A DNA stretch of 64,000 bases from IMG/VR virus record IMGVR_UViG_3300030098_004828, positions 181,647 to 245,646 of that record. One strand, 5' to 3'. The notes under the pieces were generated by a model. That model worked only from the letters and a program-made list of their open reading frames with translations. It was not told where the DNA came from and did no database searches. The stretch's first letter is position 1. Every line of letters begins with the position of its first letter. Made by a program: the position numbers and the translations under genes. Below are positions 21,901 through 56,524 of this stretch, one piece after another.

Positions 21901-24900
21901 TCTTATATATTCTCATCAATTACCTACTTATCATTTAACTAAGGTTGCAGAAATTAATAAAAAAGATATTGAAGGTTTAGATGAATTAAGATTAGGAGAT
22001 GGATATTTAAATGCTAACTATCTACTAAACCATCCTGCGTTTCAACAACTTGTTAAAGAAAATAAATTTAGAATTGGTAGAGTAAGTGGAAAAACAAAAG
22101 CTTGGAATGTAATAGATCCAGATACAAAAACTAAAATTGCTACATCACAATCTGAAGGTATACCTTATTCAGAATTTGGAGATGCTGATTTTTTAACATC
22201 ATTAATAAATTTAAAATTAGCTGGGTTTGATTCACGTAATAATAAACTATTTAAAAAAGATGTAATAAAAGAAGATGGAACACCATATGTTTTAGCTCCT
22301 GTATTTATTCGTGTAATAGCAGATGCTTCTACAGGAGACTTTACTTATCTTCCAGTTTTACAAAGTGTTAAATTTAATGAAAGAGGGTCAATAGAATTTA
22401 CTGATGAGTTTTTAGATTCTATGGAAGATCTTATTGAAAATGAATATAATAGAATCTTACAGAATGCTGAAAAACTTTTAGGTAGTAATGAAAATGTAGA
22501 TACGTTCCTTAGAAAAACAATAGGTACAGGTGAGATTGTAGGATTTAATGAAGCTGTTTCAAAAGATGATATAAGTGATAATCCTGAACAAGATAGAGCA
22601 TTTAAAATAACAAACAATGCTCAATTGATTACAGCAATGATAGCTGAAGGAATGACTTTAAAAGAATCTATAGCTACACTTGCATTAAGAAAAGCAGAAC
22701 AAACTATGAATCTTCCTGAGTTTGTTATGGATACAACATTAGAAAATCCAGATGGTAGTAAAAGACTTGGTGAAACAGAAATTAAAACTACTCCGGTAAT
22801 AGATAAGAAAACAAAAAAGAAAACACAAAAGGTAGAACAAACAATAAAGTTAAATGAGTTTACATTAGATGAATTCTATGATCAATTCTTTGATACTAAA
22901 AATCTTGCTGCTAAAGCAACTGTTCAAAGATTAAAAGAAAACATTGAAAAGAGAGATGGAAAAAAAGTAAAAAAAGAATATGTAATTGATAGAATAAAAA
23001 AACTTATACCAGACCTACAAAGTGCTCAAGCTTTTGTTTTATTACATGAACAATTTCATATAGATGAAAATCATTATAAAGATATAGAAGGTAAAGAAAC
23101 ACTTACTGAAGAAATGGAGGTTTCTGCAAACATGTATGCTCTTGAAGAGTTACAAAATAGATCTAAAGCTAAAAAGCAAACAACTGAATCACCTAATATA
23201 TTACCAAAGGGAATATATAAACCTAATACAGAAGTTAAAAAGATATTAGAGGATAATGCTTTAGATAATAAATCTTTTGATGAAGTAAGAAAAATTCTTG
23301 AAGATGCTGGTATCCCTTTAAGAGATGTTATAGCAAGTAGATTAAATTTTGAATTTGATAGATTTATAACAAGGTTAATAGATCTAAACATAATTGAAAT
23401 AAAAAAGAATGGTGACTATGTATTAAATGGTCTTGATCCAGCATTTTTAAATGGGTTTACAAATGATAAAGGTCAAAACTTAAATGAAATAAATGAAGAA
23501 TTTCACTTTCAACCTGGAGAATTACTATTTAATTTAAGACAAATATTCTTTGATGATTATAGGAATACAAAATCAATTAATGAAATATTTTTTGGTGATC
23601 AAGCTCAAGTGTATAAGAATGTAATTGAGGCTATTAAAAGAGCAAAAGGTTCTAATGCTTCAGGTATGAATGTTGAGTTTGGTTTCAAATGGGAAGTAAG
23701 TGATACATTAACTATTAGACCTTCATATCAAATAGCAGCATTTACACATAAAGATGTTGAATTATCTAAACAATATTCAGAGGGTCAACAAGAGGTGCAA
23801 GATGCATTAGTAACAATGTCAATACAAGGATTTGCACATTGGAGAGCTGGTCTTGGTTATTTAAAACCAGCTCAAGCTAAATTAATAGACGATTTAATGC
23901 AAGGTAAGCATGTTACTGTTGAAAGACTTTTAGGAAATGGAATAGATACTACAGGTTTAATGCATGAAGGACTTGGTATTAATTCTAAAAAAATGGTATA
24001 TGATGATGGAAAGTCATATATAAAAATGTCTGTAAGAGTGTTAACACCAGACTTTACAACAGATCTAGATACAAAAGAACCATTACCAGGAATGGAAAAA
24101 CTTCATCATTTAAGAGAAAAGATAGAAGCTAAAGAAGAAGAATTATTAGATAAAAATAAAGCATTAGGATTTGATCATTTTGTACCAGTAATAGCTGTAC
24201 CAGAATCTGCTTCTAAAAAGTTTAAACAAAATTTAGCTGAAGCAGAAAGTGCATATGATGAAACTACTATTCTTGATAGAAATATAGTAATGCTGGATAG
24301 CAAGTTTATGAAAGAACAACAAGTAGTTCCTAGTAATAAGATTGAAATTGTAGATCCAAGACAAATTATAAATCTATTAATGAATGAACAATATGATGAT
24401 AGTGTAACAGTAACAATACGTGGAGAAAAATATTCAGTTGCTGATCTTAAAAGATTGTTTAATACAAATGTAGGTCTTAGACGTGAACTTGATTTTACAA
24501 ATAAAAGAAATACAATATTAACATTCAATGATGTTAATGTAGATAATCATGTATATAATAGATTGTTTACAGATCATTTGGATAAAATAAAAAGAGGTGA
24601 AGTTACAATAGATCTAGCTGCGTTTAGAAAGTTTGCATTAAATAGTTTAATGGCTGGTAAAAGTAAAGCTCAGTTGTTAGAATTTTTTGAATCAGATAAT
24701 TATAATCTAAACAATCCTTTTACTAACCCAAAGTTTGAGGAATTATATTTTTCATTTTGGAAAGATGGATTTACAACTAAACAACCAGGTTATTCATTAA
24801 CACTTGTATCAGATGTAGGTTATAAAGTTGTAAAGAAAGTTATTGAAGTTGATAAAGAAACAGGAGAACCTACAAGATGGGAGGTTATACCAAAACAAAC

Positions 24901-27900
24901 CTGGATGGCTATGACAAAGAATCCTAAAAAGTTTGGTTTAGATAAAGCTCCTACATTAGCAATGAAAGATTTTACTGATCAAGAAGCTGCAACGTTTGGT
25001 AAAGATAATTTGAAGGAAGGTGATTATTATTTAGATAATCTAAGACATAATGTTATGGAGTATGATTCTAAAGGTAGACCTACAGGACAAAGATATACTG
25101 AGTTTGCAATGCCTCCTCACCATGCAAGTATACTAAAATACTGGAAACCAGGTATGCCAATAGGAGATGTATTAGGTAAAGGATTTGGTATACGTATTCC
25201 TACGCAAGATAAACACTCTGCAGCTAATATGAAAGTTGTAGATTTTATGCCAGCTTACTTTGGGTCTTCTGTTATAGTGCCTAGAGAAATAACTGAGATA
25301 TCAGGATCTGACTTTGATATAGATACTCAATATACTCATTTCAAAGAGTTTTATGTAGAAAGAAAATTAGTTAGAACTGCTGATGAAATAGAAGCAGATT
25401 GGAATAAATATGTAACAACTCCTTATTCAACAAGAAGAGGGGGGCCTTTAACTACAAGAAGAAGTGATCCAGAATTTGAAGTTGAAAAATCTAAACGTTT
25501 ATATGCAGCAAAGATGCGTAGAGAAACAGGTTTAAATTATACTTGGAATAACAGAACAGAAAAGTTTGAAGATGTATATGAAGGAAAGTTTATTGAATAT
25601 GGAACTGCTGATACAATAGAAAAAGAATATCAAGAGTATATTAGATATATGATTAAGCAAGCTAGAAAGCCTGGATCAGCTGTAAGTATTGCTATAGATA
25701 AATATCAATCTAAACAAGGGGTATTAGTTATTGAACAATTTAAAGCAAAAGATTTAGAGATATATGAAAATTCTACATGGGAAGAAATTCAAGAATACTT
25801 TAATGAAAAAGATGATAAACAAAGATATACAAATAGACTACTACTTAATGTATTAAAAACTGAAATGCATCTTCCTGATTCATTAGATACTTATAAAGAA
25901 TATAAGAAATTTAATAATGGATCAGAAATGGTGGGTGGGGTAGTACCTTATAAAGCTGCATATAATAATAGAATCTTAGATCTTAAATTTGGATTACTTG
26001 GAAATGATAATATAACAAAACCAAGAAGAGATGCAGCAATAGCTAAAGGTAATCCTTTGGCTGTACAGAATCAACCTGCTGATTTAGATCCTTTAAATGA
26101 TAAAGATTTACAAAAGAAAATAAATGAAGCATTAAAAGAAGATAAAGATATAGCAGAACTTATAAAAGAAACAACACCTGCAGTATGGCAACTTATACAA
26201 GTTAAAGCTCCTTTACTAGCACAACAATTAGAAGAAGGTAATCTTGATATTGATAACTTATATGGAAAGTCTATAATGAAATCAGCTAATGCAATGGGTA
26301 CATCTATTGTAGGAGCTGCAGTTCAACCAAATGTTGTTACGGCAATACTTAATTCTTTTGGTATTAAAATTCAAACAGCATATAGATATGATACTGAGAT
26401 AGCACCTCTATATTTAAATGGTATAACTTATGATGATTATTCTACAAACTTTTTAATAGATCCTAAAACAGGAAAACAAGATCCGGGTAGAAGAAAAGCT
26501 TATGTAATATCTGCAATTATTACAGCTTTAACAGATAATGCTAAAGAACAATTAACTGGTAAAACAGGATTACAAGTAGGAGTATTAGGTATAGTTGTAA
26601 ATATGTTAGCTCTTGGTGTAGATACACAAACAGCATTTGGAATGATTAATCATCCTGCTGTTAAACAAATTTTATTAGAATCAGGAGGTATAAATGTAAT
26701 TGGTGTTGCTCAAGGATATATAAAATCAATAAAGCAAGCAATTAAAGATAAGAAGTATACTCCAGAACAACTTAAAAATAAAAGAACTCAGGTTAATGAA
26801 AAAGATCTTTGGGATGATATTAATAAGAATTCATATGAATTACAAACTAATATTATAGAAAATGGATTAGAATATTTACCTGTTCTAGAACAACTTGTTT
26901 CAATACAATATACTAAAGAATATACAAGTAAAATAATTAAACTTATAGAGTTACTTAAAGCACCTCCTAGAAACTTATGGGGAATGCAAACTGTTATGGC
27001 AGCTGCAAACGATCTTGGTTTAGATCAAACTGATTATCAAATAGAAGTGAAAGATAAAACTCCTCCGTTTGATGTTAGACCTATATTTGAAAATATAAAT
27101 AATCATATGGGAGAATTATGGCAACAAGTTAAAGAATTAAATGCTATAAGTCCTAATGTATTTATTGCATCAAGTACAATGTTTGGTAGAATTGAAAATA
27201 TTATACATAATAGTTCTAGTTTATTTGGTGAACAAGGTCAAAGAGATAGAGAAAAAATTAAGAATAATATTATTAGTTATTTGATGATTGGTGCTTACAA
27301 AGCAGCTGGTACTAAATTTAATGAAACTTTTAATAATGGTTTAATATATCCACAATTAGAAGGTGTTAAGATTACTGATATTATAGGACAGATAAAAAAG
27401 ATATTAGAAAATAAAGAAATTGATGGAAAACCAAGAACAAATTATTTTATTAATTTTTATATAGATACAATAAAATCAAAAGATGGTTCAGAGATTGATA
27501 AGGTTTTAACTAATACATTCACTAAAATTTCTGATGCAGAAATAATGAGAATTCAAGTTAGTCTTTTAGAACTCATGGATCCTAGAGATAAAAATTTATC
27601 TAAGTTAGCACAATCTCTAATTAATTATCTTATAGTTAAAGATGGAATGCAATACAGATCAGGTTCATTTGTTAATGCTGTTCCAGCACATTTATTTGAA
27701 AACTTTATTGCTCATTTAGATAGAATACAAGATGTATTTAAAAAGCTTGAAGGAATAAATGAAATGACATCTGCAGAACGTATGGCATTAAAAGATGAAT
27801 TATCTGATATATTTGGAGAAGATTTTAATAACTTTAGTTTAGATATGATAGACAATATGTTAACTCATATATCATCTAATGGTCATATAAAAAATAATTA

Positions 27901-29299
27901 TCATAAGGATAGTTCAGATAAACCTGGTTCTCCTATTGTATTTACTAAACCTCAAGGTAAAAATCCTGCAAGATTGGTTATAGATTTAACTATGGGTACA
28001 GGTCTAGCAATACAACAAGATGAAAGTGATGTTTCAAATGTACCTGTAAAACTTATAACAGATAACGAATTAGTTAATGGTAATAGAGAAGAAATACGAA
28101 AATCTAACTTAGCTGAATCAGTTAAAGTTGAAGTTGTTAAAAATGGTGTGTCTCAATATAATAATATGTCTAAGTTTCCTTATATATTAAAGTATACTTA
28201 TACAGTTGGTTACGGACGTCAAAAACAACAAATTACTAAGCTGTTTAAACTAAATAAAATATATAGCCCGTTAAATGATAAAGATACAGGTTCAAGAAAT
28301 AACTTATTTAATGTTCTTGATTCAAATCAATTGGTGGGATATAGGGCTGAATATATAGATATAACAAATCAGCAAACAGGTTCTTCAGATCAATTTGCAG
28401 GAGGAGCTATAGCTGGAGCTTTACCATTTAACAATGTAGTAAAAGAAGATGCTAGTGAAGAAGTAAGTACAGATAAAGATAAAGGCAAGAAAAGTAAAGG
28501 AACTAAACCTAAAGGTAATTATGAAAATACAATGTCTTCTGTTAAAGCTACTGAAAATGGTGTTGAAGTTACAACTGTCAATGGAAATACACATAACAGT
28601 AATGAAGTAGATCTTAATAATGCTATGAACCAAGAAGGTGAAGTAGGAAGAGGGGGATCAGTTCTTGATCTAGAAGGAATGGTTGGTAAAGAAGAAGAAT
28701 TACCTTCTTTTGAAGAAGCAATAAATATAGTTTCAGAGATGGAAGATACTATTAATGAAATTGCAATGCAACCTGATAATGTAGCTAAAGTACTTTCAGG
28801 AGAAAAAACTACTACATTAAGAACAAAAAATTTACCAAGTGGAGTGTATAATATTGGTGGACAATTATTTAATTTAACTAATAGAGGAAACTTAACAGTA
28901 GAAGAAGCAGGTGGTGTAGAAGCTATAACTAAATCAGAAGCATTTGCAAAAACAGGTCCTAAATTTTCATCAACAAAAAAATGGCTTGAAGGAGAAGGAA
29001 AACTATATGTATATGATATTACACCTGTTAGTGAAACTATTAATGAGGCTGAAGCAGCTTTTGCTGAAACATATGATAGTGAATCTGGTCAATTAGAAAT
29101 AAACTTTGGTGATGAGGTTGGAGCATCAAGTAATAAGCTGGAAAAGTTTATGGAATTATGGGAAGAATTAGATGTAGAAGAACAAAAAAAAATAATCCAA
29201 CATTATGAATTAACAGCAATTGATAATGATATAGTAATTAATATGTTAATGGATAAATCACCAAAAGAAGTAATAGAACGTTTGAAAAAATGTAGTTAA
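12920..29299 (+). CDS. Giant virion-packaged RNA polymerase polyprotein (5459 aa) with zincin and ASCH domains
   Basis: EISGSDFDID at 25310-25324 (about D4131-D4135) is the crAss-like RNAP catalytic loop, preceded by GIRIPTQ (RxP). HEAFH zincin motif at 19868-19882 with downstream EEYMADEF. ASCH signature VLSGEKTTTLR near 28790-28822. Confidence 0.9.
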   Translation: MAENLNNIPTVEDSGNLGSVPTETANIGPGQTPMFNLPSASINPANFAPDYKTALDQIDFSPLTERAYGPSPVNPETAKLIEMAAIPINRIASPAYNNINSTAPGRATGGYNPYSQQGQLDLTTKQGRNERLAQAFMNASDSTGADTTPGYQDPLVFGSKKFNYDRMMAHPNSGELGFHPLYDNESYYNKNSTWYDDSRRMGKQWRRMFSNAFMSSYRNIGDMLSGNWSWSDDEGAAIMEDAMRIGSSTRGGFTEWLHNTTLSSAYTAGIMTNIGVEMGVLALATAATGGTAAPATVTKAAQSLYSGVRGIFNSVKSVSAISNTLKAFRLPTVSKDFWNAFNATKVAQGISTAGQYTAKFLTPSTLKAFKDLRTSAAALDDMSQLAKTSKVFGAFYNDMRYINLAVAESRLEAGLVENETFSKLYQEFTHANGRPPNKEELALMRQQSIRAAKTTFMFNAPIIYLTNKVTIEKWMGKIKSLSGMVNMKGMAARFVKSPGKFGKDVYKGFGSMREMIMAGGLRHNAKYIGGAALRYAADGVNEGLQEVYQETVSAAATHYYAGLYQQPIAAGYDIFEVAMTKDSSDKAMQAVRHGLAHGPSWGVFASGFFTGMLVAPYSKVMFQGIPNLFQMATNNEQYQKDKKTREDWIKQTEKELNKMAEDPKFFFDPKKLNVIAQKQLDDEYWNFGIQGDILNFIDTKEHSMFQHIYTALQLGNLNEFRDYINDILQLDDQALEEAFMDKNTGKVKDGYTAEQLRKHFDGLNEKLDVIEDNYNNFDIDNPFDRNKYEEGTRDYYEEQIREYAFNHAKMQMIFNSNAMNDAASRKESIEAAITAITGMSDLIIDDLMILTSRRDIFQEINNLNRDIESLKYSKTPDDKKELAKLKKKKKLLEDFYEVLGDPENQHKSSKEYRNDKRIKQQGTPYKKRHHKIKERLKEMVEEKSLPDSIDDPKYGEKDTKDSIAKITSQDRDITYIYNLHKDGSISYTAKVKNDILDKEFKSEKQLESYIKKKEKTVYETVIDKKTGKPKKVGTYKTYVQEVMLKYKRDAKSMKKLMKVFTPYVEFLVKESGGKPINADQMKNVLSMIVDYGHLNFRISDMYKANQILSDPASLKRYSERISIPMIRLWKRHKRNQGRRVRKFVDKEIRKQYLKTLAKAGIFVDPKQVKHFLSVENLTQADIPTTFLTDTGEMLYDPVFGHTNQKQYEIMVQARQVLIDELIAPKEEKKDDGDGVDTKTIDDGSTAEDALNEDLTDDPQEKEEIKRIKDELNEFKSEDEDTIAILTREYEKYRKAAIALNMPILSQAQWLQQKGGGRAILQARYQAYSVYNEDEDKDQYETFNDWLRANVRSDKIQNIVEKFGLAPYAIMIEDVTSSKKLKDGVLLQGEVDASQGKYADYDMFIIKTPGAFVDGKQQFIYRIVNSKGKNVYDEGTYNNLNLPQEIFDNGYLTLGEANNAIKEILKAIPENTTFNFEGQTFKKGDRVSYKGKNYVVLNDAADFTSRGKLMVRDELFPEAEPITIAPGEFTGWKKEETSNQYFKEAIVVGENVQRLSHGKGMTFGKPMNHELNKNSEIKNEKDLQTVLKNMDPERRKKLRIQITRAKQPNKKHGESVNMNHGEINPVIKKGSKRFNVLLIDPDSGDVIGRLDGLDNFIFIDKKTGKSITPLEMTLDNVFDYFRNFKSKTAKQQLKEIKENYAQLTLIEELFDELLDETGTDKVTIGLDSLKKGKINKSLNISATDKGKELTEKLKDVFVHVTPGSKIFTERGKKDHETPIKELKYKYINQNGNMFILDTSNLGSDISDLEYSNQLAIREAIDRQGLGGLTGRYILAVRTPNNMYKGGYFHLVELRTTSMSQEDTQLLFNDIMSQQKLTVSTNINKRGKVLQDKKKGLGFKFNEAFNIDVQNKMYIAMPHGHNVNIILQPSGDITFKFSQTRDAGGQTFKVNLNRKTITDAKLESMQDLLDLASSGLREIFQNELNNNPQFIIPLGFGVELQASKLGGTPRNLNVSQIRNTIKADPTLTELEADGIVAIAPKDVTGNVFAQLRYNNTEEVNNLIASKNNKTQIEKDRANPSEIKNDLFTFERYQKAGWHHYPEAALKALAIKMLTDENLLTEDEKKIIAATKLEEKLKTGEIEVNVETNTEGGVGIVGDETQEELMQKKERIEEKIKEAEQQAEDKIWDEIEGANPNLSQEDKNDLFDKAMEEWEKSPDEGYVSLQNQKKEIDSKIKAGKIIRHDNYDGNDIVDLDEFIAWLKENLPGFISVEAIEQLGINLATNGVTVGTFAMTLKNIAGKINVEGKIYTGANSPFKYHEAFHAVYRMLLTQEEQKRLQGLAEKEVNKKLNSKSGYRYQGKTYKSLDTLLKDFRKESILYTQLSKSELKKRLYEEYMADEFDKFKVNPRNSKTNSEIKNFFTRLIEFIKSIFRNFSGNDLRSFYEKIDSGKFKNTTLQDNEFTRPGQEVNPAQEITQYATKIVIGQQTIKKSVLNRETNKNEIKPVNENIYMPADEEIQLRNNIAALFLKRMANNAELNKAALLQKTVQDYINIYNPKLSRHKKSADYRNLRRTLKAKLDGLKNAESDIILSVKNYLNLFDVNIDLANVSDKDIQDLEGFTPGGAKAWEASANKQGGLRKLSRDIRIFIGSTSMPASEALLEDQLYGITGVPTIDKETGKLVESDIEELVVSVDAATVYNGMLKSAGNSSTQLEVLQKMIMFGKNNPQTGAVVDNLMNKAGIQVRDYDRILMLDSSEPVGAIGPVSDPVFLNAVIKQMTQFTSDYLRIEENTNPETGAGVVSIYAANHADDISAQLDRWRKRFFTIKTYRWEHQKKAKRSREAAAGFANFISIINAGKALNEQQLEDKASEISKNLRNLTGIDLSVGFIKYSILHELNNKGVQLEPLQENFLNRNSDSYAMTLNDANKLAGLLQNNIDILSRSKEKFSKETDDRVKKEKVDHRKDGAEGSLRDMARGNAVFDENVGNTVFTDEKGDLIYSHQLPTYHLTKVAEINKKDIEGLDELRLGDGYLNANYLLNHPAFQQLVKENKFRIGRVSGKTKAWNVIDPDTKTKIATSQSEGIPYSEFGDADFLTSLINLKLAGFDSRNNKLFKKDVIKEDGTPYVLAPVFIRVIADASTGDFTYLPVLQSVKFNERGSIEFTDEFLDSMEDLIENEYNRILQNAEKLLGSNENVDTFLRKTIGTGEIVGFNEAVSKDDISDNPEQDRAFKITNNAQLITAMIAEGMTLKESIATLALRKAEQTMNLPEFVMDTTLENPDGSKRLGETEIKTTPVIDKKTKKKTQKVEQTIKLNEFTLDEFYDQFFDTKNLAAKATVQRLKENIEKRDGKKVKKEYVIDRIKKLIPDLQSAQAFVLLHEQFHIDENHYKDIEGKETLTEEMEVSANMYALEELQNRSKAKKQTTESPNILPKGIYKPNTEVKKILEDNALDNKSFDEVRKILEDAGIPLRDVIASRLNFEFDRFITRLIDLNIIEIKKNGDYVLNGLDPAFLNGFTNDKGQNLNEINEEFHFQPGELLFNLRQIFFDDYRNTKSINEIFFGDQAQVYKNVIEAIKRAKGSNASGMNVEFGFKWEVSDTLTIRPSYQIAAFTHKDVELSKQYSEGQQEVQDALVTMSIQGFAHWRAGLGYLKPAQAKLIDDLMQGKHVTVERLLGNGIDTTGLMHEGLGINSKKMVYDDGKSYIKMSVRVLTPDFTTDLDTKEPLPGMEKLHHLREKIEAKEEELLDKNKALGFDHFVPVIAVPESASKKFKQNLAEAESAYDETTILDRNIVMLDSKFMKEQQVVPSNKIEIVDPRQIINLLMNEQYDDSVTVTIRGEKYSVADLKRLFNTNVGLRRELDFTNKRNTILTFNDVNVDNHVYNRLFTDHLDKIKRGEVTIDLAAFRKFALNSLMAGKSKAQLLEFFESDNYNLNNPFTNPKFEELYFSFWKDGFTTKQPGYSLTLVSDVGYKVVKKVIEVDKETGEPTRWEVIPKQTWMAMTKNPKKFGLDKAPTLAMKDFTDQEAATFGKDNLKEGDYYLDNLRHNVMEYDSKGRPTGQRYTEFAMPPHHASILKYWKPGMPIGDVLGKGFGIRIPTQDKHSAANMKVVDFMPAYFGSSVIVPREITEISGSDFDIDTQYTHFKEFYVERKLVRTADEIEADWNKYVTTPYSTRRGGPLTTRRSDPEFEVEKSKRLYAAKMRRETGLNYTWNNRTEKFEDVYEGKFIEYGTADTIEKEYQEYIRYMIKQARKPGSAVSIAIDKYQSKQGVLVIEQFKAKDLEIYENSTWEEIQEYFNEKDDKQRYTNRLLLNVLKTEMHLPDSLDTYKEYKKFNNGSEMVGGVVPYKAAYNNRILDLKFGLLGNDNITKPRRDAAIAKGNPLAVQNQPADLDPLNDKDLQKKINEALKEDKDIAELIKETTPAVWQLIQVKAPLLAQQLEEGNLDIDNLYGKSIMKSANAMGTSIVGAAVQPNVVTAILNSFGIKIQTAYRYDTEIAPLYLNGITYDDYSTNFLIDPKTGKQDPGRRKAYVISAIITALTDNAKEQLTGKTGLQVGVLGIVVNMLALGVDTQTAFGMINHPAVKQILLESGGINVIGVAQGYIKSIKQAIKDKKYTPEQLKNKRTQVNEKDLWDDINKNSYELQTNIIENGLEYLPVLEQLVSIQYTKEYTSKIIKLIELLKAPPRNLWGMQTVMAAANDLGLDQTDYQIEVKDKTPPFDVRPIFENINNHMGELWQQVKELNAISPNVFIASSTMFGRIENIIHNSSSLFGEQGQRDREKIKNNIISYLMIGAYKAAGTKFNETFNNGLIYPQLEGVKITDIIGQIKKILENKEIDGKPRTNYFINFYIDTIKSKDGSEIDKVLTNTFTKISDAEIMRIQVSLLELMDPRDKNLSKLAQSLINYLIVKDGMQYRSGSFVNAVPAHLFENFIAHLDRIQDVFKKLEGINEMTSAERMALKDELSDIFGEDFNNFSLDMIDNMLTHISSNGHIKNNYHKDSSDKPGSPIVFTKPQGKNPARLVIDLTMGTGLAIQQDESDVSNVPVKLITDNELVNGNREEIRKSNLAESVKVEVVKNGVSQYNNMSKFPYILKYTYTVGYGRQKQQITKLFKLNKIYSPLNDKDTGSRNNLFNVLDSNQLVGYRAEYIDITNQQTGSSDQFAGGAIAGALPFNNVVKEDASEEVSTDKDKGKKSKGTKPKGNYENTMSSVKATENGVEVTTVNGNTHNSNEVDLNNAMNQEGEVGRGGSVLDLEGMVGKEEELPSFEEAINIVSEMEDTINEIAMQPDNVAKVLSGEKTTTLRTKNLPSGVYNIGGQLFNLTNRGNLTVEEAGGVEAITKSEAFAKTGPKFSSTKKWLEGEGKLYVYDITPVSETINEAEAAFAETYDSESGQLEINFGDEVGASSNKLEKFMELWEELDVEEQKKIIQHYELTAIDNDIVINMLMDKSPKEVIERLKKCS

Positions 29300-29304
29300 A
29301 AGAA

Positions 29305-29312
29305 TATATTTG
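29305..29312 (+). promoter_or_regulatory. Bacteroidota -7 promoter element TATATTTG, 3 nt before ATG 29316
   Basis: Exact TAnnTTTG match in a 16-bp intergenic gap. Confidence 0.5.
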
Positions 29313-29315
29313 CAT

Positions 29316-32300
29316 ATGAAATGTTATAATAGAAATTCAGGAGAGTATCAAGAACTATACAAAAAGTATGGATCATATCTTAAGACAGACATGCTTATTG
29401 ATGAATATCAAGCTGTTCATAAAACAGATATAATTCCTACTATACAAGACGTTGCACAATTACAAAAAACTAAAAGGACTCAATTCAGTTTAAAGAAAAA
29501 AGAACTTTCTAAAGCAATTATAGCAAATCTTAGAAACAAAGGGTATATACGTAAACGTAATGGTCAATGGTGGATAGTATCCAATAAACAATATGGATAC
29601 AATGATTATGATTTTGATCCCGCTACATTTAGACGTAATGCAGAAGCTATCAAAGCTTATTTACGTTTATGGAATATTCCAAAAGAGTTTTTAATTCTTG
29701 AATTTGGTACAAGAAAAAAGTACCGTGGTTATGATAACAATCATCCATCATTAAGAGCTGCTGAAATTATTCAATGGGGAAGAATAGAATTTGATAAAGA
29801 TGCTTTAACCCTAGAAGATACACTTCCAGAAATGAGAAGTAAAAATACAACACATATTAACATGCTTTTAGAACATTTGAAAAAAGTGTTTCCTCAAATT
29901 GGTATGGATATTGTAAGTGTTGCAGAAGCAAAAGAATATTATGAATCTTTACCTGCATCACAACAAATGGTTCCATTTTCTCAAATTAAAAGTTATATAT
30001 ATGATGGACGTGCTAAAATTATAAAAGGAAGAGTAACAGCTGAAACAGCTGTAGAAGAAGTATTACACCCTTTTGTAAATGCATTGATGATAGAAAATCC
30101 TGCTTTAACTAAAGCTTTATTAAAAGAAGCTGAAGAAAACTTTCCTGTTTTAGCTCAAGAAATAATAGAAGCATATAGTGATAAAAGAGGATTTACTAAT
30201 AGAGACAGACAAAATGAATTACTTACACAAGCATTGTCTAGACATTTTAATGAAGAGTTTGAAGGGAAACCAACAAGAGGTTGGAGAGAAAAAATATTAG
30301 AACTATTACAATGGTTAGCAAAACATGTATCAGATATATGGAAATATGTATCAGGTAATGAGTTAGTACTTACTGCAGGAATGATAAATGAAAAAACATC
30401 AATGAGTGATCTTGCTAGATTATTAAATACAAAAGACTTACAATTTAAATTGGATGAAAGAGCTATTAAAAATGATGGTAAGATTCAATTTAAATTAAGT
30501 AAAAGATTACAAGATATCTTAGATAGAAGATTTGCAAATGCAACTGATGCACAAAACAAAACAAAAGAGAAACTTTTTCATCAAGGAAAGGTAAGTAAAG
30601 AAGAGATTGATATACTTTCTGCTACTGGTGTAAATCCTGTAGATGGAACTAAAACACCACTTACCATTCTAGATAAAGGAAAAGATAATAAACAACATGT
30701 ATATAGAAATATAGCTACAGGAGATATAGGTACCTCTGTAACAAGTCTTATTAATGGGGAGTTTGTACAAGAATATCCTGTTGGACCTAATGAAACTTTA
30801 GATGATGTTTTAAATACATATGGTCTTAAGATGGAAGAGTTAATGCTTGCAAATAGAATGACAGAGCAAGAATTAAAACAAGCATTTAAAAAAGGAAAAA
30901 ATAAAATTGGACGTATTCAAATTCCTAGAGGAAATGAATTTGCAATAAATAGAGAAATAGGTGAAGACTTTGATAACATTATGAACGGTTTAGCTGAAGG
31001 ATTACCTTGGAATGAGATTAAAGAAGATATGACTTTTGAAAGAGTACCAGAAGCTTTAGCTGAAAAATTTTATAATCAAGTTTTAGATTTATTATACAAT
31101 GAAGTAACAAGTACACCAAACTGGTTTTCAAGAGGTGCAATTGTAGTTCCACAAGTTGTAGTTTCAAATATAATTAATACAGGAGAACTTAATTCAAAAG
31201 GACAACCTATACATAGATTTGTAGCAGGAACTATAGATCTTTTGGTAATAAATGAAGACGGAAGTGTATTTCCTGTAGATCTTAAAACAAGTTGGACAAG
31301 TATATCTGATCCTGCATATAATAAAGGATATCCCGTAGGTCCTGGTAGTATACTTTATGATCCCAGTAAATCACAATCAGAACAAAGAAAACTTTCTAAA
31401 AAACAAAGACATGGTGCACAGGTAAATGTATATGGAAGACTATTAGAAAATTCTGGATATGATGTAAGGGGTAAACAAACAAATGCTGATCTTAGAGCTA
31501 TTACATTTCATTTTCAAGTTAAATTAGATAAAAACAATGAAAAGTTAGTTGATTATAATTATGATGGAAGTAAGAATCATGTTCCTGGTCATTTTGATGA
31601 TATAGCAGAAAAAATTGCACCATATCAAGTAGATAAAAAAAGACAAAAGCAAGTTCAATCAGAAAGTGTAGATCAGTATCTTGAAGAAGAAGACAATAGT
31701 AAACAACTAGCAGAAGAAGAAATAATTGCTTCAGATACATATCAAGCTATATTTGAAGTAATGGATCAGTTTCAGCAACACTTAATATCAAGAAGAAAAG
31801 CTGTTGATAGATTAAGAGAGTCTGTTAAACTAATGGGAACTAAAGCTCAAGAAATAGAGAAGATAGATTTTGCAATATCTGCTATAACTTTAGCAATGAG
31901 AGATGCAAAAGTTGATGTATTATATACTGAACTTCTTAGAGATGCTATAAAACAATTAGATAGCTTTTTAGAATATATAGATCCTGCAAGAGGAAATGCA
32001 ACTCATCCAGAATTTATTTCTAAAGTTGTAAACTTTCAAAGAACATTAGAAGGATTTCAAGGTTTAACAAAACTTACAAAGAATGAAGGTTTAACTAATG
32101 AACAACTTAAATTAAAAGACACACTTCAAACAAAATTAACTGAGATAGCAGATGGAGGAGATTCTAAAATAAATTTAGCTATAGATGATTATGTTAGAAC
32201 TCTTGTTAGAAATGAATCATCTAGAGATTTTGATGATCAAGATTTAGATCTATTGATGCGAAGAGGACAAGATATAGGAATGGCAATTTATTATACTGGT

Positions 32301-35270
32301 GATATGGCCACGCAAAGAGATACACTTCTTGCATTAATGGATAAAATATATAAAAGACAAAGACAAAAAGTAATTGATGCTGTAATCTTAAGAAACTCAG
32401 AAATAAAAAAAGCTGCATCTAAATTAGAAAAATTAAGCGGGGGAAAAGTTGATTATAGTTTTATGTTAAGTTATGATCCTGAAGGTAACTTTACAGGTAG
32501 ATATGTTAAAGAAGTAGGACGTACATATTATGATAAACTAACCAAACTTAGAGAACAATTAACTGATATAGATGGTGTTTGGAAAGAGTATGTATATAAT
32601 GCAGATACATCTTGGTATGGTACAAAAGAAGGTCAAGAAGCTTTAAAACGTAATAAAGAGATACATGCTGCTAGGCAAAAGTTGCGTGAGTTTATGCAAC
32701 CTGAAAGAGTTATAGATGGTGTTCCACAAGATGGTTTAAATCATAAATATACTGCAGAGTTTAAAGAAGCTAGAGCAAAGTATCAAATTTTCAAACCTTA
32801 TAAAGGAGGTAAAGGTGGAAGATGGGTTAAAGCAGATGGTATATCTAAAGAAGAATACCAACAGTTTTTATTAAAGTATTATGATACTGTAGATTATAGT
32901 AGAGCTATATATGATCAGCAAGGAAATTTTACAGGAATGGTTCAACCAGATAGTGATTATTTTCCAAAAAGAGAGTTTACAGAAATAAGAACTGATTCTA
33001 CAATAGATGGTAAAAGTATAAAGGATGAAAAGTATGTAAAGCTTATGGAAACTGATCCTGCTGCTATGACAGAATTAGAAAAAGCACAAAAAGAATTTTA
33101 TGAAATGTATATAAAACATTTTGAAAATGACTTATTACAGAAACTTCCTCCATCAGTTATGGATCAAATGATTGGAAGAGTGCCTACAATTAAAGATAAT
33201 TTATATAATGATCTTAAAAAGAAAGGACCATTTTTTGTTAGGTTATGGGCAAAAATGACAAGAAGTATTAAGAACTTTTGGCAAACAACCTCAATTGCTA
33301 GAAAAGTTACTACAGATGAAAATGGTAATATAATAAATACTCTTCCTATTTATTATGTTGGTAAACCAAGAACAGAAAAAGAATTAGCTGATATTGAAGA
33401 TGCAATAAATAAACTTGATGCTGAATATAAAGCGCTTGATGATCCTAAACCAAAAGATGAAGATGCCTATAGAACTAAAAGAGGTGAGCTTATAGAAAAA
33501 AGAATGTCTTTACAAACAAGACCTACTGTAAATGAACTTCAAATGGATATAGCAGACAGCCTTATGAGATTTAGTATGATGGCTGAAAACTATGAGATCA
33601 TGGGTCAGATTGAAGATACTTTACATGCAATGCTTAAAGTTATTAAGCAAAGACAATATACTCCAGCTAGTGGTGAAAAATTAAGATCTATGGTTGGTGG
33701 TGTTATGAAAACTGTTGGTAGAAGAGCAACTGATGATTTAGAAGATCCTTTAATTGTTCAAAGAGCTAAGAAGTTTATGAAAATGGTTTATTATGATAAT
33801 GATAAAACAACCAAAGATATGTTTGATAAATTATCAGATGCATTAATAAGTTATACATCTTTAACTTATGTAGGTTTTAATCCATTTGGTAACTTTAATA
33901 ACTATATGGTTGGTAGAATGTCTAATTTTATAGAGACTGCTGGTGGTATGTATTATGATAGAAGAGCTGCTGGAAGAGCTATTATGGAGTTTAATAAAAG
34001 AGCAATACCAGATTTTATAAGATCTGTAGGTCATAGAACTTATTTAACTGAAAAATTAGGTATGGCTGCTGGACAATATGAAGACTATATACCTCAAAGT
34101 AAATATGAAGCAATGGTTGATTTCTTTAGAATGATGGATGCTAAAGCTGATATACGTGAAACAATAGGAAACAAAGGTAAAGATGGTGGTTGGGAAAGAT
34201 TTAAAGGATGGGGTTATATGATACAGGATGCTGCAGAATATAATGTACAAACTAAAGTAGGTATGTCAATCCTTATGACAATAAGAGCTGTAAAGCTTGA
34301 TGAAAATGGTGACATTGCAGAAGATATGTCTTTATATGATGCTCTTGATAATGATCCTCAAACTGGAGAAGTAAAATTAAAAGATGGTTTTACTCATATT
34401 CAAGAGTATAGAAATGGTAAATTAAGAACTAGAAAAAATAAAGAAGGAAAAGAAGTTGCTAGATTAAAGGAGTGGAATAATGATACTAGATATGATATTA
34501 GAAATAATATACGTGAAGTAAATAAACAAATACACGGTAACTATGCATATGAAGATAGAACTATAATGCAAACTATGGCTTTAGGTAGATTGGCAATGCA
34601 GTTTCATAAATGGGTTGCTCCAACTATTAAAGCTAGGTTTAGACCAGAATATTATGATGAAAACTTAGGATGGGTTGAAGGTAGATATTTAACAGGATGG
34701 AGTTTTATGAAATATGCTGTTACTAATTTAAGAGAAGGACGTAATGTGCTTAGAAATTGGAAAGCACAACAAGGTGCAAAAGGTGAATATAAAGTAAGAA
34801 ATTTAAAAAGAAATATAGGAGATATAACTGTAGTATTAGCTTCAATATTCTTAAAGATAATTTTAACAGCTATGCTTAAAGGCGGAGATGCAGATGATGA
34901 TGAGTCAGCATTACAAAGAAAATTAGAAAATGTTTTACTCTATCAATTAGATAGACAGAAACAAGAATTCATGATGTTCTGGCCTATATTAGGAGCTGAA
35001 GAATTATTTAAATTAAGTAAGTCCCCTTTCTCTTCATTAAGAACATTAGAAGAATTAGCTGAAGCTGGAGGTGTTACATTTAGTACTATAACTTTAGGTT
35101 TAACAAAATCTAAAGAAGATTTTTTAGCAGATAAAAGAGTTGTATATCAAAGAGGAAGTAGAACAGGACAATGGAAAATAAACAAAAATTGGATGGATGC
35201 TGTTCCACTATTATATGCTTTTGAAAAATGGAAAAAGTATATGGATCAACAAGATTTTCATGTTAAATAA
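29316..35270 (+). CDS. Large ejection/polyvalent protein (about 1984 aa): degenerate zincin, PD-(D/E)XK nuclease with LysM insert, helical C-terminus
   Basis: EEVLH at 30054-30068; SVT..AGTIDLL..VDLKT..QVNVY at 30735-31433; LysM-like YPVGPNETLDDVLNTYGLKMEELMLAN..IQIP at 30774-30926. ATG 29316 is preferred over the track's TTG 29310. Confidence 0.7.
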   Translation: MKCYNRNSGEYQELYKKYGSYLKTDMLIDEYQAVHKTDIIPTIQDVAQLQKTKRTQFSLKKKELSKAIIANLRNKGYIRKRNGQWWIVSNKQYGYNDYDFDPATFRRNAEAIKAYLRLWNIPKEFLILEFGTRKKYRGYDNNHPSLRAAEIIQWGRIEFDKDALTLEDTLPEMRSKNTTHINMLLEHLKKVFPQIGMDIVSVAEAKEYYESLPASQQMVPFSQIKSYIYDGRAKIIKGRVTAETAVEEVLHPFVNALMIENPALTKALLKEAEENFPVLAQEIIEAYSDKRGFTNRDRQNELLTQALSRHFNEEFEGKPTRGWREKILELLQWLAKHVSDIWKYVSGNELVLTAGMINEKTSMSDLARLLNTKDLQFKLDERAIKNDGKIQFKLSKRLQDILDRRFANATDAQNKTKEKLFHQGKVSKEEIDILSATGVNPVDGTKTPLTILDKGKDNKQHVYRNIATGDIGTSVTSLINGEFVQEYPVGPNETLDDVLNTYGLKMEELMLANRMTEQELKQAFKKGKNKIGRIQIPRGNEFAINREIGEDFDNIMNGLAEGLPWNEIKEDMTFERVPEALAEKFYNQVLDLLYNEVTSTPNWFSRGAIVVPQVVVSNIINTGELNSKGQPIHRFVAGTIDLLVINEDGSVFPVDLKTSWTSISDPAYNKGYPVGPGSILYDPSKSQSEQRKLSKKQRHGAQVNVYGRLLENSGYDVRGKQTNADLRAITFHFQVKLDKNNEKLVDYNYDGSKNHVPGHFDDIAEKIAPYQVDKKRQKQVQSESVDQYLEEEDNSKQLAEEEIIASDTYQAIFEVMDQFQQHLISRRKAVDRLRESVKLMGTKAQEIEKIDFAISAITLAMRDAKVDVLYTELLRDAIKQLDSFLEYIDPARGNATHPEFISKVVNFQRTLEGFQGLTKLTKNEGLTNEQLKLKDTLQTKLTEIADGGDSKINLAIDDYVRTLVRNESSRDFDDQDLDLLMRRGQDIGMAIYYTGDMATQRDTLLALMDKIYKRQRQKVIDAVILRNSEIKKAASKLEKLSGGKVDYSFMLSYDPEGNFTGRYVKEVGRTYYDKLTKLREQLTDIDGVWKEYVYNADTSWYGTKEGQEALKRNKEIHAARQKLREFMQPERVIDGVPQDGLNHKYTAEFKEARAKYQIFKPYKGGKGGRWVKADGISKEEYQQFLLKYYDTVDYSRAIYDQQGNFTGMVQPDSDYFPKREFTEIRTDSTIDGKSIKDEKYVKLMETDPAAMTELEKAQKEFYEMYIKHFENDLLQKLPPSVMDQMIGRVPTIKDNLYNDLKKKGPFFVRLWAKMTRSIKNFWQTTSIARKVTTDENGNIINTLPIYYVGKPRTEKELADIEDAINKLDAEYKALDDPKPKDEDAYRTKRGELIEKRMSLQTRPTVNELQMDIADSLMRFSMMAENYEIMGQIEDTLHAMLKVIKQRQYTPASGEKLRSMVGGVMKTVGRRATDDLEDPLIVQRAKKFMKMVYYDNDKTTKDMFDKLSDALISYTSLTYVGFNPFGNFNNYMVGRMSNFIETAGGMYYDRRAAGRAIMEFNKRAIPDFIRSVGHRTYLTEKLGMAAGQYEDYIPQSKYEAMVDFFRMMDAKADIRETIGNKGKDGGWERFKGWGYMIQDAAEYNVQTKVGMSILMTIRAVKLDENGDIAEDMSLYDALDNDPQTGEVKLKDGFTHIQEYRNGKLRTRKNKEGKEVARLKEWNNDTRYDIRNNIREVNKQIHGNYAYEDRTIMQTMALGRLAMQFHKWVAPTIKARFRPEYYDENLGWVEGRYLTGWSFMKYAVTNLREGRNVLRNWKAQQGAKGEYKVRNLKRNIGDITVVLASIFLKIILTAMLKGGDADDDESALQRKLENVLLYQLDRQKQEFMMFWPILGAEELFKLSKSPFSSLRTLEELAEAGGVTFSTITLGLTKSKEDFLADKRVVYQRGSRTGQWKINKNWMDAVPLLYAFEKWKKYMDQQDFHVK

Positions 35271-55960: not shown

Positions 55961-56524
55961 TTATTTAAATAATTCAACTTCAATCATTTTTTTTGTAAAA
56001 TTCTCTTCTTTTAAGTCTGGTTTATCACACAGTTCTCCTACTTCTACAAGTATTTCTATTGGTATATTTAATATTTCTGAATATGTTTCATAAAAATGTT
56101 CAGGATATAAATAACTTTCAACATAATCTGTTATAGTTCCGATCTTACCAAAGAAATTTAATATTTTTATTTTTGTTCCTTCAGTAAATTTAGAATATTT
56201 TCCTTCTTTAAATTTTATTAAATCTTTTTTTAAGTGGGAAAAGTTAAATACAAAAAGATGCATTTCATTATTTATTTTATGATATTGTTCATATTTTGAA
56301 TGACATGTTATATGAAGTTCTTTAAAAACTTCAAATTGTTTTAATGTTTGTTCACATTGGGTATCTATTGAATATAGACATAAGAATTTGTTCTCATTCA
56401 AATTCATATTATCCCAAGATATATATGTTTGAATAGGAACAAATCTTATACCCTTTCTAATCCCTAATAAGGGATATAAGAAAACTTTACTTTTTTGAAA
56501 ATATTCTTTATAAATTTGTTTCAT
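55961..56524 (-). CDS. Hypothetical protein (187 aa)
   Basis: ORF track; operon-coupled (YFQKSKVFLYPLLGI). Confidence 0.7.
   Translation of the reverse strand: MKQIYKEYFQKSKVFLYPLLGIRKGIRFVPIQTYISWDNMNLNENKFLCLYSIDTQCEQTLKQFEVFKELHITCHSKYEQYHKINNEMHLFVFNFSHLKKDLIKFKEGKYSKFTEGTKIKILNFFGKIGTITDYVESYLYPEHFYETYSEILNIPIEILVEVGELCDKPDLKEENFTKKMIEVELFK

What the first reader, a model, noticed from the sequence alone, without database searches (positions are those of the whole stretch)
30735..31560. LysM domain inserted inside a PD-(D/E)XK nuclease within an ejected protein
Between the SVT motif (30735) and the following helix and catalytic core (D at 31236, D-L-K at 31278-31286, QxxxY at 31419-31433) sits a 51-aa LysM-like unit (30774-30926). 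A peptidoglycan/GlcNAc-binding module nested in an apparently intact nuclease on a virion-delivered protein is unusual. It could tether the protein during envelope crossing or be a mobile passenger domain. The nuclease might attack host DNA or process phage DNA ends at injection (inference).
Basis: partly seen in the sequence, partly recalled or inferred. Interest (0 to 1): 0.6.

Follow-up and report, generated by a model that had tools for sequence, protein, structure and literature searches.

The report
LysM domain nested in phage nuclease
A giant virion-carried protein of a marine crAss-like phage contains a RecB-type DNA nuclease with a cell-wall-binding LysM module spliced into one of its loops; the nuclease was already known in such proteins, but the LysM insert, gained once in a small sub-lineage and lost again twice, appears to be new.

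Summary
The gene at 29316..35270 (+) lies directly after the virion RNA polymerase gene. Its C-terminal third is homologous to crAss001 Gp49 and phi14:2 gp076, both found in virions by mass spectrometry.

Residues 463-771 form a RecB/AddA-like PD-(D/E)XK nuclease without an Fe-S cluster. D643, D657-x-K659 and Q704xxxY708 are kept in 90-99% of about 150 family representatives.

Residues 489-539 are a true LysM domain, spliced between the N-terminal SVT element and the first core helix. A profile of 12 homologous inserts matches solved LysM domains at E 1.9e-14. The AF2 model superposes on LysM structures at 1.9-2.4 A. T496, N515 and P539 are invariant.

About 135 of 154 relatives have only a 0-13 residue linker at this site. 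On a tree built from the C-terminal 1149 columns, all full-length LysM carriers fall in one 11-member clade. That fits one gain and two losses, not a mobile passenger.

The PDDEXK domain in crAss "transcription-block" giants is already published (Yutin 2021). I found no report of the nested LysM. A role as a peptidoglycan tether during ejection is plausible but untested. Verdict: a real, modestly interesting new variant of a known kind.

The parts
29316..35270 (+). Gene for the Gp49-like giant virion cargo / polyvalent protein. It is 1984 aa from the ATG; the ORF as listed starts at TTG 29310, and residue numbers in this report count from 29310.
   Evidence: ORF list and translation. Orthologs start at the MKCYN residue. 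The C-terminus is homologous to crAss001 Gp49 and phi14:2 gp076.
30696..31622 (+). RecB/AddA-like PD-(D/E)XK nuclease domain (residues 463-771), including the nested insert.
   Evidence: AF2 model plus Foldseek and VIA matches. PF12705 is found in 45 of 82 homologs. There is no Cys, so no Fe-S cluster.
30735..30743 (+). N-terminal nuclease element S476-V-T478 (motif I-like), preceded by H463-x-Y465.
   Evidence: Invariant or nearly invariant in alignments A1-A3. Structural alignments to 3l0a, MGME1, ACE1 and Cas4 start at model residues 1-15, so this element belongs to the nuclease fold.
30774..30926 (+). Nested LysM domain (Y489-P539). It has a beta-alpha-alpha-(extra alpha)-beta layout, with invariant T496 (30795), N515 (30852) and P539 (30924).
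30948..30974 (+). Start of the first core helix, N547-R-E-I-G551-E-D-F-D555, directly after the insert.
   Evidence: N547 is kept in 122/142, G551 in 142/148 and D555 in 137/149 representatives. It corresponds to helix 88-108 of the model.
31236..31238 (+). Catalytic D643 (motif II).
   Evidence: Kept in 151 of 153 representatives.
31278..31286 (+). Catalytic D657-L-K659 (motif III, (D/E)xK).
   Evidence: D is kept in 147/152 and K in 147/152.
31419..31433 (+). Q704-x-x-x-Y708 (the RecB-family motif IV helix).
   Evidence: Q is kept in 143/149 and Y in 135/149.
33510..34985 (+). Region homologous to crAss001 Gp49 / phi14:2 gp076 (residues about 1401-1892).
   Evidence: tblastn E 2e-18 to 8e-21 at 23% identity.
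12920..29299 (+). Upstream 5459-aa ORF. It is a fusion of a Gp47-like part and the Gp50-like virion RNA polymerase (DFDID motif at residue 4131). It supplies the genomic context for the finding.
   Evidence: Local tblastn against the crAss001, cr85_1 and phi14:2 loci, plus the motif scan.

Best explanation
The gene encodes the Gp49-type cargo protein of a marine crAss-like (Crassvirales-type) phage that probably infects a Bacteroidota host. It is a modular, 'polyvalent' protein, packaged in the capsid and expelled with the virion RNA polymerase at infection.

Its residues 463-771 are a catalytically intact RecB/AddA-like, Fe-S-free PD-(D/E)XK nuclease. This is the third PDDEXK copy that some crAss-like phages carry inside a transcription-block giant.

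In one sub-lineage, a LysM domain was inserted once into the surface loop between the N-terminal SVT element and the first core helix. LysM's N and C termini lie side by side, so it fits into a loop without disturbing the host fold.

The insert keeps the LysM signature: an acidic residue, then Thr, then Leu/Ile after strand 1; the Asn after helix 2; and Ile/Val-Pro in strand 2. The most likely role is therefore to bind GlcNAc-containing glycan of the murein layer while the protein is in the periplasm during ejection. That would dock the N-terminal, enzyme-bearing part of the cargo protein at the cell wall, as an accessory and dispensable aid to envelope crossing. The nuclease itself would act on DNA, either the leading phage DNA end or host DNA.

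Shown: domain identities, nesting, conservation, phyletic pattern, and homology to virion proteins. Inferred: ejection of this particular protein, glycan binding, periplasmic site of action, and the nuclease substrate.
For: Identity and nesting:
-; the figures are given in the observation check.

Insertion pattern:
- Only 12 of 154 representatives carry the LysM. About 135 have a 0-13 residue linker.
- On a tree from 1149 C-terminal columns, independent of the insert, all 8 full-length carriers lie in one 11-row clade (support 99). Three non-carriers lie inside it. None of 500 label shuffles was as clustered.
- The second, 32%-identical phage genome in the same record has a canonical-length LysM (Pfam 23.6-23.9 bits) at the same site.
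- T496, N515 and P539 are invariant in all 12 inserts, although they are as little as 18-29% identical overall.

Virion and cargo context:
- The gene follows the vRNAP gene (DFDID motif).
- It matches crAss001 Gp49 and phi14:2 gp076. Gp49 was detected in virions and treated as ejected cargo (PMC10172136).

Polyvalent character:
- Kinase-PolyVal in ortholog P0006.
- PolyA_pol head plus HD in ortholog P0162.

Other:
- A precedent for LysM as an inserted domain is the CVNH-LysM lectin, which appears among the structural and profile hits (5c8o, 2l9y).
- A conserved hydrophobic helix (1835-1859) is compatible with membrane insertion of an ejection protein.
Against: - No binding or localisation data exist.
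- The current crAss001 model has the RNAP-associated cargo proteins passing the tail partly unfolded on their way to the cytoplasm (PMC10172136; PMC10136315). That leaves little obvious opportunity for a folded LysM in the periplasm.
- A nuclease has no evident substrate in the periplasm other than the transiting phage DNA.
- The LysM was lost at least twice within the clade (P0019/P0073 and P0029), so it is dispensable.
- The window's own copy is divergent. It is below the Pfam cut-off, has NET instead of GDT, and has 7-8 more residues than the canonical-length insert of P0162, with an extra helix between helix 2 and strand 2.
- crAss001 Gp49 and phi14:2 gp076 themselves lack the nuclease, and hence the LysM. 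Virion packaging of the N-terminal half is therefore extrapolated from the C-terminal homology.
Confidence: 0.5

Rival explanations
1. The LysM is a tolerated, essentially neutral or merely fold-stabilising insertion in a permissive surface loop. It has no glycan-binding role.
For: - The same loop carries unrelated insertions of about 50 residues in P0040 and P0121, so it is permissive.
- LysM was lost twice inside the clade without loss of the nuclease.
- The window's copy is divergent and below the Pfam cut-off.
Against: - The insert has been retained through divergence to about 32% identity of the whole protein.
- The three most diagnostic LysM positions are invariant and the length is conserved.
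- The LysM evolves at about the same rate as its host domain: 86/47/44% identity in the insert against 89/56/49% over the whole region for the same orthologs.
Confidence: 0.22
2. The LysM-fold insert is a protein-protein contact module used inside the virion or the ejectosome, like the LysM-like domains of contractile-tail baseplate proteins. It is not a carbohydrate binder.
For: The structural hits include LysM-like domains of a Streptomyces contractile injection system baseplate (9gtp_P, Z 4.6) and of the cyanophage A-1(L) baseplate (8kea_J, Z 4.5). It is established knowledge that LysM-like domains occur as structural elements in baseplates such as T4 gp53 and P2 gpX (from memory, not tested here).
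Against: By sequence profile the insert is closest to bona fide cell-wall LysM domains (P60_tth, LytE, MltD, AtlA, SafA). It retains their signature residues. No partner is indicated.
Confidence: 0.13
3. The LysM acts in the cytoplasm after delivery. It would bind GlcNAc-containing precursors (UDP-GlcNAc, lipid II) or another ligand, to localise or regulate the nuclease / vRNAP complex at the inner face of the membrane.
For: The cargo proteins are thought to end up in the cytoplasm with the vRNAP (PMC10136315). The nuclease needs DNA, which is cytoplasmic. A C-terminal hydrophobic helix suggests membrane association.
Against: I know of no precedent for a cytoplasmic role of LysM in bacteria, and none was found in the papers searched. 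This is pure inference.
Confidence: 0.08
4. The LysM is a mobile passenger that has inserted repeatedly and independently at this site.
For: - The nuclease-domain tree alone does not resolve the carriers as one clade.
- P0162 carries a shorter, canonical-length LysM than the others.
- P0162 groups with a non-carrier, P0029.
Against: - The better-resolved C-terminal tree puts all carriers in one 11-member clade (99), so one gain plus two losses suffices.
- The AU test does not reject monophyly even on the nuclease tree (p 0.39).
- All inserts sit at exactly the same junction.
- No intein, homing-endonuclease or repeat signature accompanies the insert. It is a plain in-frame domain.
Confidence: 0.05

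Closest known systems
PDDEXK domain inside a large 'transcription-block' protein of crAss-like phages (Yutin et al. 2021, PMC7886860)
   Same: The genomic position is the same: a giant gene next to the vRNAP gene. The nuclease superfamily is the same. Each of the two genomes in the record also has the other two described copies, in the structural block and the replication block, exactly as that paper describes.
   Different: That paper and the Crassvirales review do not mention a LysM (0 occurrences). Here the nuclease carries a nested LysM, in a small sub-clade only.
crAss001 Gp49 / Cellulophaga phage phi14:2 gp076 (virion cargo, 'RNA-polymerase-associated' proteins)
   Same: The C-terminal roughly 450-490 residues are homologous (23% identity, E 2e-18 to 8e-21). 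The gene order is the same, directly after the vRNAP gene. Both were found in virions by mass spectrometry (record annotation).
   Different: They are 1349-1421 aa long and lack the nuclease domain and the LysM. The window protein is 1984 aa with an extra N-terminal half: a zincin-like region, the nuclease and the LysM.
RecB / AddA / Dna2 / MGME1 / RecE-type PD-(D/E)XK nucleases (Pfam PF12705 clan)
   Same: It has the alpha-beta-beta-beta-alpha-beta core and the D...(D/E)xK and QxxxY motifs. Structural Z is 8-9.5 for the AddA, 3l0a, Dna2, MGME1, Cas4-family and RecE nuclease domains, and RecB is the top Foldseek match.
   Different: There is no helicase partner domain and no Fe-S cluster. It is embedded in a virion protein, and it has a domain inserted between the N-terminal element and the first core helix.
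LysM cell-wall-binding domains (PF01476), and the CVNH-LysM lectin MoCVNH3 as a precedent for a nested LysM
   Same: It has the beta-alpha-alpha-beta fold and the signature Thr, Asn and Pro. Like MoCVNH3 (5c8o, 2l9y among the hits), the LysM is inserted in a loop of another domain.
   Different: The host domain is a nuclease in a phage cargo protein. Most inserts, the window's included, have 7-8 extra residues and an extra helix between helix 2 and strand 2. Glycan binding is untested.
Polyvalent proteins of phages and conjugative elements (Iyer et al. 2017, PMC5512222)
   Same: Disparate enzymatic modules sit in one giant, virion-associated polypeptide. These are Kinase-PolyVal in ortholog P0006, PolyA_pol plus HD in P0162, and the nuclease in all. 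Peptidoglycan-directed domains are a described theme.
   Different: That survey lists peptidoglycan-cleaving enzymes (lysozyme, SpoIID, DD-peptidase) but no LysM (0 occurrences). Here there is a binding module only. No lytic domain was detected in this protein.

Membership tests
LysM domain (Pfam PF01476) | Match to the family HMM above the curated gathering score (20.9 bits) | tested here: inconclusive
   The window copy scores 15.9 bits, E 0.013, below the cut-off. The homologous inserts P0051 (36.5), P0015 (31.6), P0162 (23.6) and P0104 (22.4) pass it. A profile of the 12 inserts matches solved LysM domains at E 1.9e-14.
LysM domain (Pfam PF01476) | Beta-alpha-alpha-beta fold with adjacent termini | tested here: met
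   AF2 model strands 32-36 and 81-85, with helices 43-49 and 54-61 plus an extra helix 65-71. It superposes on 4xcm, 4uz2, 4s3j, 8rhe, 5k2l and 2mkx at Z 4.6-5.6 and rmsd 1.9-2.5 A over 46-51 residues.
LysM domain (Pfam PF01476) | Signature residues of the glycan groove: (D/E)-T-(L/I) after strand 1, Asn after helix 2, and (I/V)-P in strand 2 | tested here: met
   T496, N515 and P539 are invariant in all 12 inserts. The position before Thr is acidic in 11 of 12.
LysM domain (Pfam PF01476) | Binding of GlcNAc-containing glycans (peptidoglycan, chitin) | not testable with these tools
   Needs pull-down, ITC or NMR with sacculi or oligosaccharides.
PD-(D/E)XK nuclease, RecB-like (Pfam PF12705 PDDEXK_1) | Match to the family HMM | tested here: inconclusive
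   The window domain itself gives no hit. 45 of 82 aligned homologs match at E <= 0.01 (best 1e-6), and P0007 passes the cut-off (23.6 against 22).
PD-(D/E)XK nuclease, RecB-like (Pfam PF12705 PDDEXK_1) | Alpha-beta-beta-beta-alpha-beta core fold | tested here: met
   The model elements are H88-108, E157-173, E179-193, E199-207, H243-260 and E276-285. VIA Z is 9.5 for AddA, 9.0 for 3l0a, 8.7 for Dna2, 8.4 for MGME1 and 8.2 for Cas4. The top Foldseek hits are RecB/AddA nuclease domains. Atlas matches are PDDEXK_1, DUF3799 and DUF2800.
PD-(D/E)XK nuclease, RecB-like (Pfam PF12705 PDDEXK_1) | Catalytic D ... (D/E)-x-K plus the Q-x-x-x-Y motif | tested here: met
   D643 151/153, D657 147/152, K659 147/152, Q704 143/149 and Y708 135/149.
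PD-(D/E)XK nuclease, RecB-like (Pfam PF12705 PDDEXK_1) | Metal-dependent DNA cleavage | not testable with these tools
   Needs an enzyme assay with D643/D657/K659 mutants.
Cas4 / AddB-type Fe-S nucleases | Four-cysteine Fe-S cluster flanking the nuclease core | tested here: not met
   There is no cysteine in residues 455-775. The protein is therefore not filed as Cas4 despite structural Z 8.2.
crAss Gp49-type virion cargo protein | Sequence homology to Gp49 and position directly downstream of the vRNAP gene | tested here: met
   tblastn gives E 2e-18 to the crAss001 Gp49 CDS and 2e-6 to phi14:2 gp076. The upstream ORF carries the DFDID motif and matches Gp50.
crAss Gp49-type virion cargo protein | Physical presence in virions and ejection into the host | not testable with these tools
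   Known only for crAss001 and phi14:2 by mass spectrometry (annotation). This phage is uncultured.
Polyvalent proteins (Iyer 2017) | Several unrelated enzymatic domains in one polypeptide of a phage or conjugative element | tested here: met
   At family level: the nuclease in all members, Kinase-PolyVal (PF18762, 2.2e-23) in P0006, and PolyA_pol head (6.7e-19) plus HD in P0162. For the window protein itself, only the nuclease, the LysM and a weak zincin-like region were detected.

The most novel reading that the evidence does not exclude
The conserved LysM would show that the enzyme-bearing N-terminal half of Gp49-type cargo proteins refolds in the periplasm and docks on the murein. These 'RNA-polymerase subunits' would then really be components of a trans-envelope ejectosome. 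Its wall-anchored nuclease would process the leading end of the phage genome as it passes, for instance exposing single-stranded DNA for the co-ejected virion RNA polymerase.
Probability: 0.15. Interest if true: 0.7.

Novelty: new variant of a known kind. Interest (0 to 1): 0.42.

Why it matters
How crAss-like phages move megadalton amounts of cargo protein and their DNA across the Bacteroidota envelope is unknown. What Gp49-type proteins do is also unknown. A cell-wall-binding module conserved inside such a protein is a cheap experimental handle:

- It predicts a periplasmic, murein-associated stage for at least part of the cargo.
- Natural LysM-plus and LysM-minus orthologs (for example P0162 against P0029) are available for comparison.

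The finding also adds a second clear case of LysM as a nested domain, and a first case inside a nuclease. If the LysM turns out to be inert, the finding is only an annotation detail.

Tried and rejected
- Direct Pfam and PHROGs scans of the whole protein and of residues 440-800 gave nothing significant.
- A PDB sequence-profile search with the nuclease alignments gave no significant nuclease hit. The best true relative was ACE1, a Cas4-family protein, at E 0.22. The nuclease assignment therefore rests on Pfam hits in homologs and on fold comparison.
- The tree of the 208-column nuclease domain was too poorly resolved to decide on one or several insertions. An AU test only showed that monophyly is not rejected, p 0.39. 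I replaced it with a tree of the long C-terminal region. A first attempt timed out in MAFFT.
- I looked for a peptidoglycan-cleaving partner domain. An AF2 model of residues 1-462 (pLDDT 77) shows no lysozyme-like fold. It gives only a weak zincin-like resemblance (Z 6.1-6.7, below the level the tool calls reliable). Pfam on the five upstream giant ORFs and on the 5459-aa ORF gave nothing.
- The Cas4 assignment was rejected because the domain has no cysteines.
- Literature searches for LysM in ejection proteins, or for LysM together with PDDEXK, found no paper describing this architecture. This is absence in the held library only.
- The protein-atlas feature search gave only sub-threshold leads (0.86) to viral PDDEXK clusters.
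- Not used: the reads tools, complex prediction and alternative genetic codes. Table 11 reads the gene without stops.
- The large protein search was used once, because the family scans left the protein open and the claim depends on presence or absence of the insert in relatives.
Full report
**Context**

The window has about 30% GC and belongs to a distant crAss-like phage. The finding lies in the ORF 29310..35270 (+), called P0001 here. Orthologs start at the ATG at 29316. This ORF directly follows a 5459-aa ORF (12920..29299).

That upstream ORF matches crAss001 Gp50, the cr85_1 RNA polymerase and the phi14:2 vRNAP around a DFDID motif at residue 4131. It matches Gp47 weakly further upstream. 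It is therefore a fused virion RNA polymerase gene.

Residues about 1401-1892 of P0001 are homologous to crAss001 Gp49 (E 2e-18, 23% identity), to the cr85_1 1351-aa protein (E 8e-21) and to phi14:2 gp076. Gp49 (154.5 kDa) was detected in crAss001 virions by mass spectrometry and is treated as ejected cargo (PMC10172136). phi14:2 gp076 is annotated as structural from MS/MS. So "virion-delivered protein" is supported by homology and synteny, but not shown for this phage.

A neighbouring phage gene carries a T9SS C-terminal sorting domain. One ortholog comes from Tara samples. Both point to a marine Bacteroidota host.

**Checking the observation**

*Nuclease.* P0001 itself gives no Pfam or PHROG hit, but the other evidence agrees:
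- A profile search of 1.84 billion representatives found 331 relatives. Nearly all are 1500-2700-aa proteins.
- 45 of 82 aligned domains match PF12705 PDDEXK_1.
- An AF2 model of residues 455-775 (pLDDT 75, pTM 0.67) has the alpha-beta-beta-beta-alpha-beta order.
- The model matches AddA (Z 9.5), the 3l0a exonuclease (9.0), Dna2 (8.7), MGME1 (8.4), the Cas4-family proteins ACE1 and Cas4 (8.2) and RecE (8.0). RecB nuclease domains are the top Foldseek matches, E 9e-4. Viral PDDEXK_1, DUF3799 and DUF2800 clusters match in the ESM Atlas.
- D643, D657, K659, Q704 and Y708 are kept in 90-99% of about 150 representatives. N547, G551, D555 and Q615 are also kept.
- There is no cysteine in the domain, so it is not a Cas4/AddB-type Fe-S nuclease.

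I could not measure distances between the catalytic residues, because coordinates are not exposed. They do fall on the canonical strands and helix.

*LysM.* The window's copy alone is sub-threshold (15.9 bits against 20.9). At family level the assignment is clear:
- Inserts at the same alignment position pass the Pfam cut-off in P0051, P0015, P0104 and P0162.
- The 12-insert profile hits solved LysM domains at E 1.9e-14 to 1e-3, and the top 17 hits are all LysM.
- Model residues 31-87 superpose on LysM structures at rmsd 1.9-2.4 A, Z 5.0-5.6.
- T496, N515 and P539 are invariant.
- Most inserts, the window's included, have 7-8 extra residues that form an additional helix between helix 2 and strand 2. 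The insert of P0162 has the canonical length.

*Nesting.* The insert sits between the short helix that follows the SVT element and the long first core helix (NREIGEDFD). Structural alignments to single-domain nucleases begin at model residues 1-15, upstream of the insert. The LysM is therefore truly nested.

**Distribution**

Of 154 relatives examined:
- 12 carry the LysM.
- About 135 have a 0-13 residue linker.
- P0040 and P0121 have unrelated inserts of about 50 residues, and P0138 one of 29 residues, at the same loop.

The nuclease-domain tree is unresolved, and the AU test for monophyly gives p 0.39. A tree from 1149 C-terminal columns, independent of both the insert and the nuclease, is more informative. 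It places all eight full-length carriers in one 11-member clade out of 97 (support 99). Three non-carriers lie inside that clade: P0019 with P0073, and P0029. This fits one gain and two clean losses, and none of 500 label shuffles was as clustered. That argues against a mobile passenger and shows the LysM is dispensable.

**The record and the sister genome**

The window's record (245,646 bp) is two syntenic genomes of about 121-125 kb joined head to tail, with 70-90% nucleotide identity in patches.

The ortholog in the other genome is P0162 (2593 aa, 32% identical). It has the LysM at the same site. It also has an N-terminal poly(A)-polymerase/CCA-type nucleotidyltransferase head plus an HD domain. 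Another ortholog, P0006, has Kinase-PolyVal.

The family therefore behaves like the polyvalent proteins of Iyer et al. 2017, with variable N-terminal enzyme modules on a conserved scaffold.

Each of the two genomes also has stand-alone PDDEXK genes in the structural and replication blocks. This matches the three-copy pattern described by Yutin et al. 2021, who already noted a PDDEXK domain in a large transcription-block protein. crAss001 Gp49 and phi14:2 gp076 lack the nuclease.

**Mechanism**

The domain identities, nesting, conservation and phyletic pattern are shown. How the insert works is inferred.

I favour (about 0.4-0.5) the view that the LysM binds murein glycan while the cargo protein is in the periplasm during ejection. 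It would act as an accessory docking aid.

For this view:
- The glycan-groove signature has been retained through deep divergence.
- The insert is closest to bona fide cell-wall LysM domains.
- Peptidoglycan-directed modules are a recurring theme in ejected and polyvalent proteins.
- A conserved hydrophobic helix near the C terminus (1835-1859) fits an envelope-spanning ejection protein.

Against it:
- The prevailing model has the RNAP-associated cargo passing unfolded to the cytoplasm.
- The insert was lost twice.
- A periplasmic nuclease lacks an obvious substrate other than the transiting phage DNA.

The rivals are a neutral or stabilising insert in a permissive loop, a protein-protein contact module as in baseplate LysM-like domains, a cytoplasmic ligand-binding role, and repeated mobile insertion (the least likely). 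The nuclease substrate, whether phage end or host DNA, remains open.

**Comparison and novelty**

The nuclease in this protein class is already known. The Gp49 homology is ordinary. The polyvalent architecture is a known kind. I found no description of the nested LysM. The nearest structural precedent for a nested LysM is the fungal CVNH-LysM lectin.

I rate the finding a new variant of a known kind, with moderate interest. It is real and clean, and it gives a testable handle on crAss cargo ejection. It is confined to a small uncultured clade and has no functional evidence.

Noticed in passing
whole record G000 (window = G000 181647-245646); junction near G000 124,690-124,783: The 245,646-bp 'virus record' is two related, syntenic crAss-like genomes of about 121-125 kb joined head to tail. 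Position 2 aligns with 124,783 and position 124,690 with the last base, at 70-90% nucleotide identity in patches. This is probably a chimeric or concatenated assembly of two co-occurring relatives, not a 245-kb jumbo genome, despite the '100% complete' label. A 10-N gap lies at window 60107-60116.
   Followed up: partly
L004 (G000:C1:91058-98851), protein P0162 residues 228-572: The ortholog in the sister genome carries an N-terminal poly(A)-polymerase/CCA-adding-type nucleotidyltransferase head (PF01743, E 6.7e-19) plus an HD domain (PF01966). These are fused to the same nuclease-LysM scaffold, so a tRNA/RNA-repair-like or nucleotide-signalling module may be delivered with the virion.
   Followed up: partly
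ortholog P0006 residues 127-259 (metagenomic protein): Another ortholog has a Kinase-PolyVal domain (PF18762, E 2.2e-23) in the N-terminal region. The N-terminal part of this Gp49-like family is a swappable enzyme slot, as in 'polyvalent proteins'.
   Followed up: no
window 12920-29299 (+): The 5459-aa ORF appears to fuse a Gp47-like part (residues about 2256-2453, weak match) with the Gp50-like virion RNA polymerase (DFDID at residue 4131). crAss001 encodes these as separate genes on opposite strands.
   Followed up: partly
window 29838-30449 (+), P0001 residues 177-380; motif E249-E-V-L-H253 at 30054-30068: The N-terminal region models (pLDDT about 80-90) as a fold weakly resembling zincin-like proteases: PPEP-2/3 at Z 6.4-6.7, the non-catalytic N-domain of lethal factor at 6.0-6.1, and ArdC at 3.7. 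It has invariant E249, E250 and H253, that is EExxH instead of HExxH. The scores are below the level the tool calls reliable, so the function is open.
   Followed up: partly
window 34812-34886 (+), P0001 residues 1835-1859: This is the only strongly hydrophobic segment of the protein (Kyte-Doolittle 2.1). It lies at the equivalent position in four of the five other orthologs checked (P0004, P0007, P0015; P0162 by eye), and P0019 has none above the threshold. It could be a membrane-inserting helix of an ejection protein.
   Followed up: no
window 41166-44186 (+): A 1006-aa phage protein ends in a type IX secretion C-terminal sorting domain (Por_Secre_tail, E 2.8e-10). This points to a Bacteroidota host and suggests a phage protein exported by the host's T9SS.
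   Followed up: no
orthologs P0040 (residues about 455-505), P0121 and P0138: The same nuclease loop carries unrelated, non-LysM inserts of 29-50 residues in other lineages, so this loop is a general insertion hot spot in the family.
   Followed up: no
window 56521-57540 (-); G000 145075-145560 (+) outside the window: Stand-alone PDDEXK_1 nuclease genes lie in the replication block (339 aa, 32.3 bits) and the structural block (281 aa). Together with the Gp49-like copy they give the three-copy pattern reported for some crAss-like phages.
   Followed up: partly
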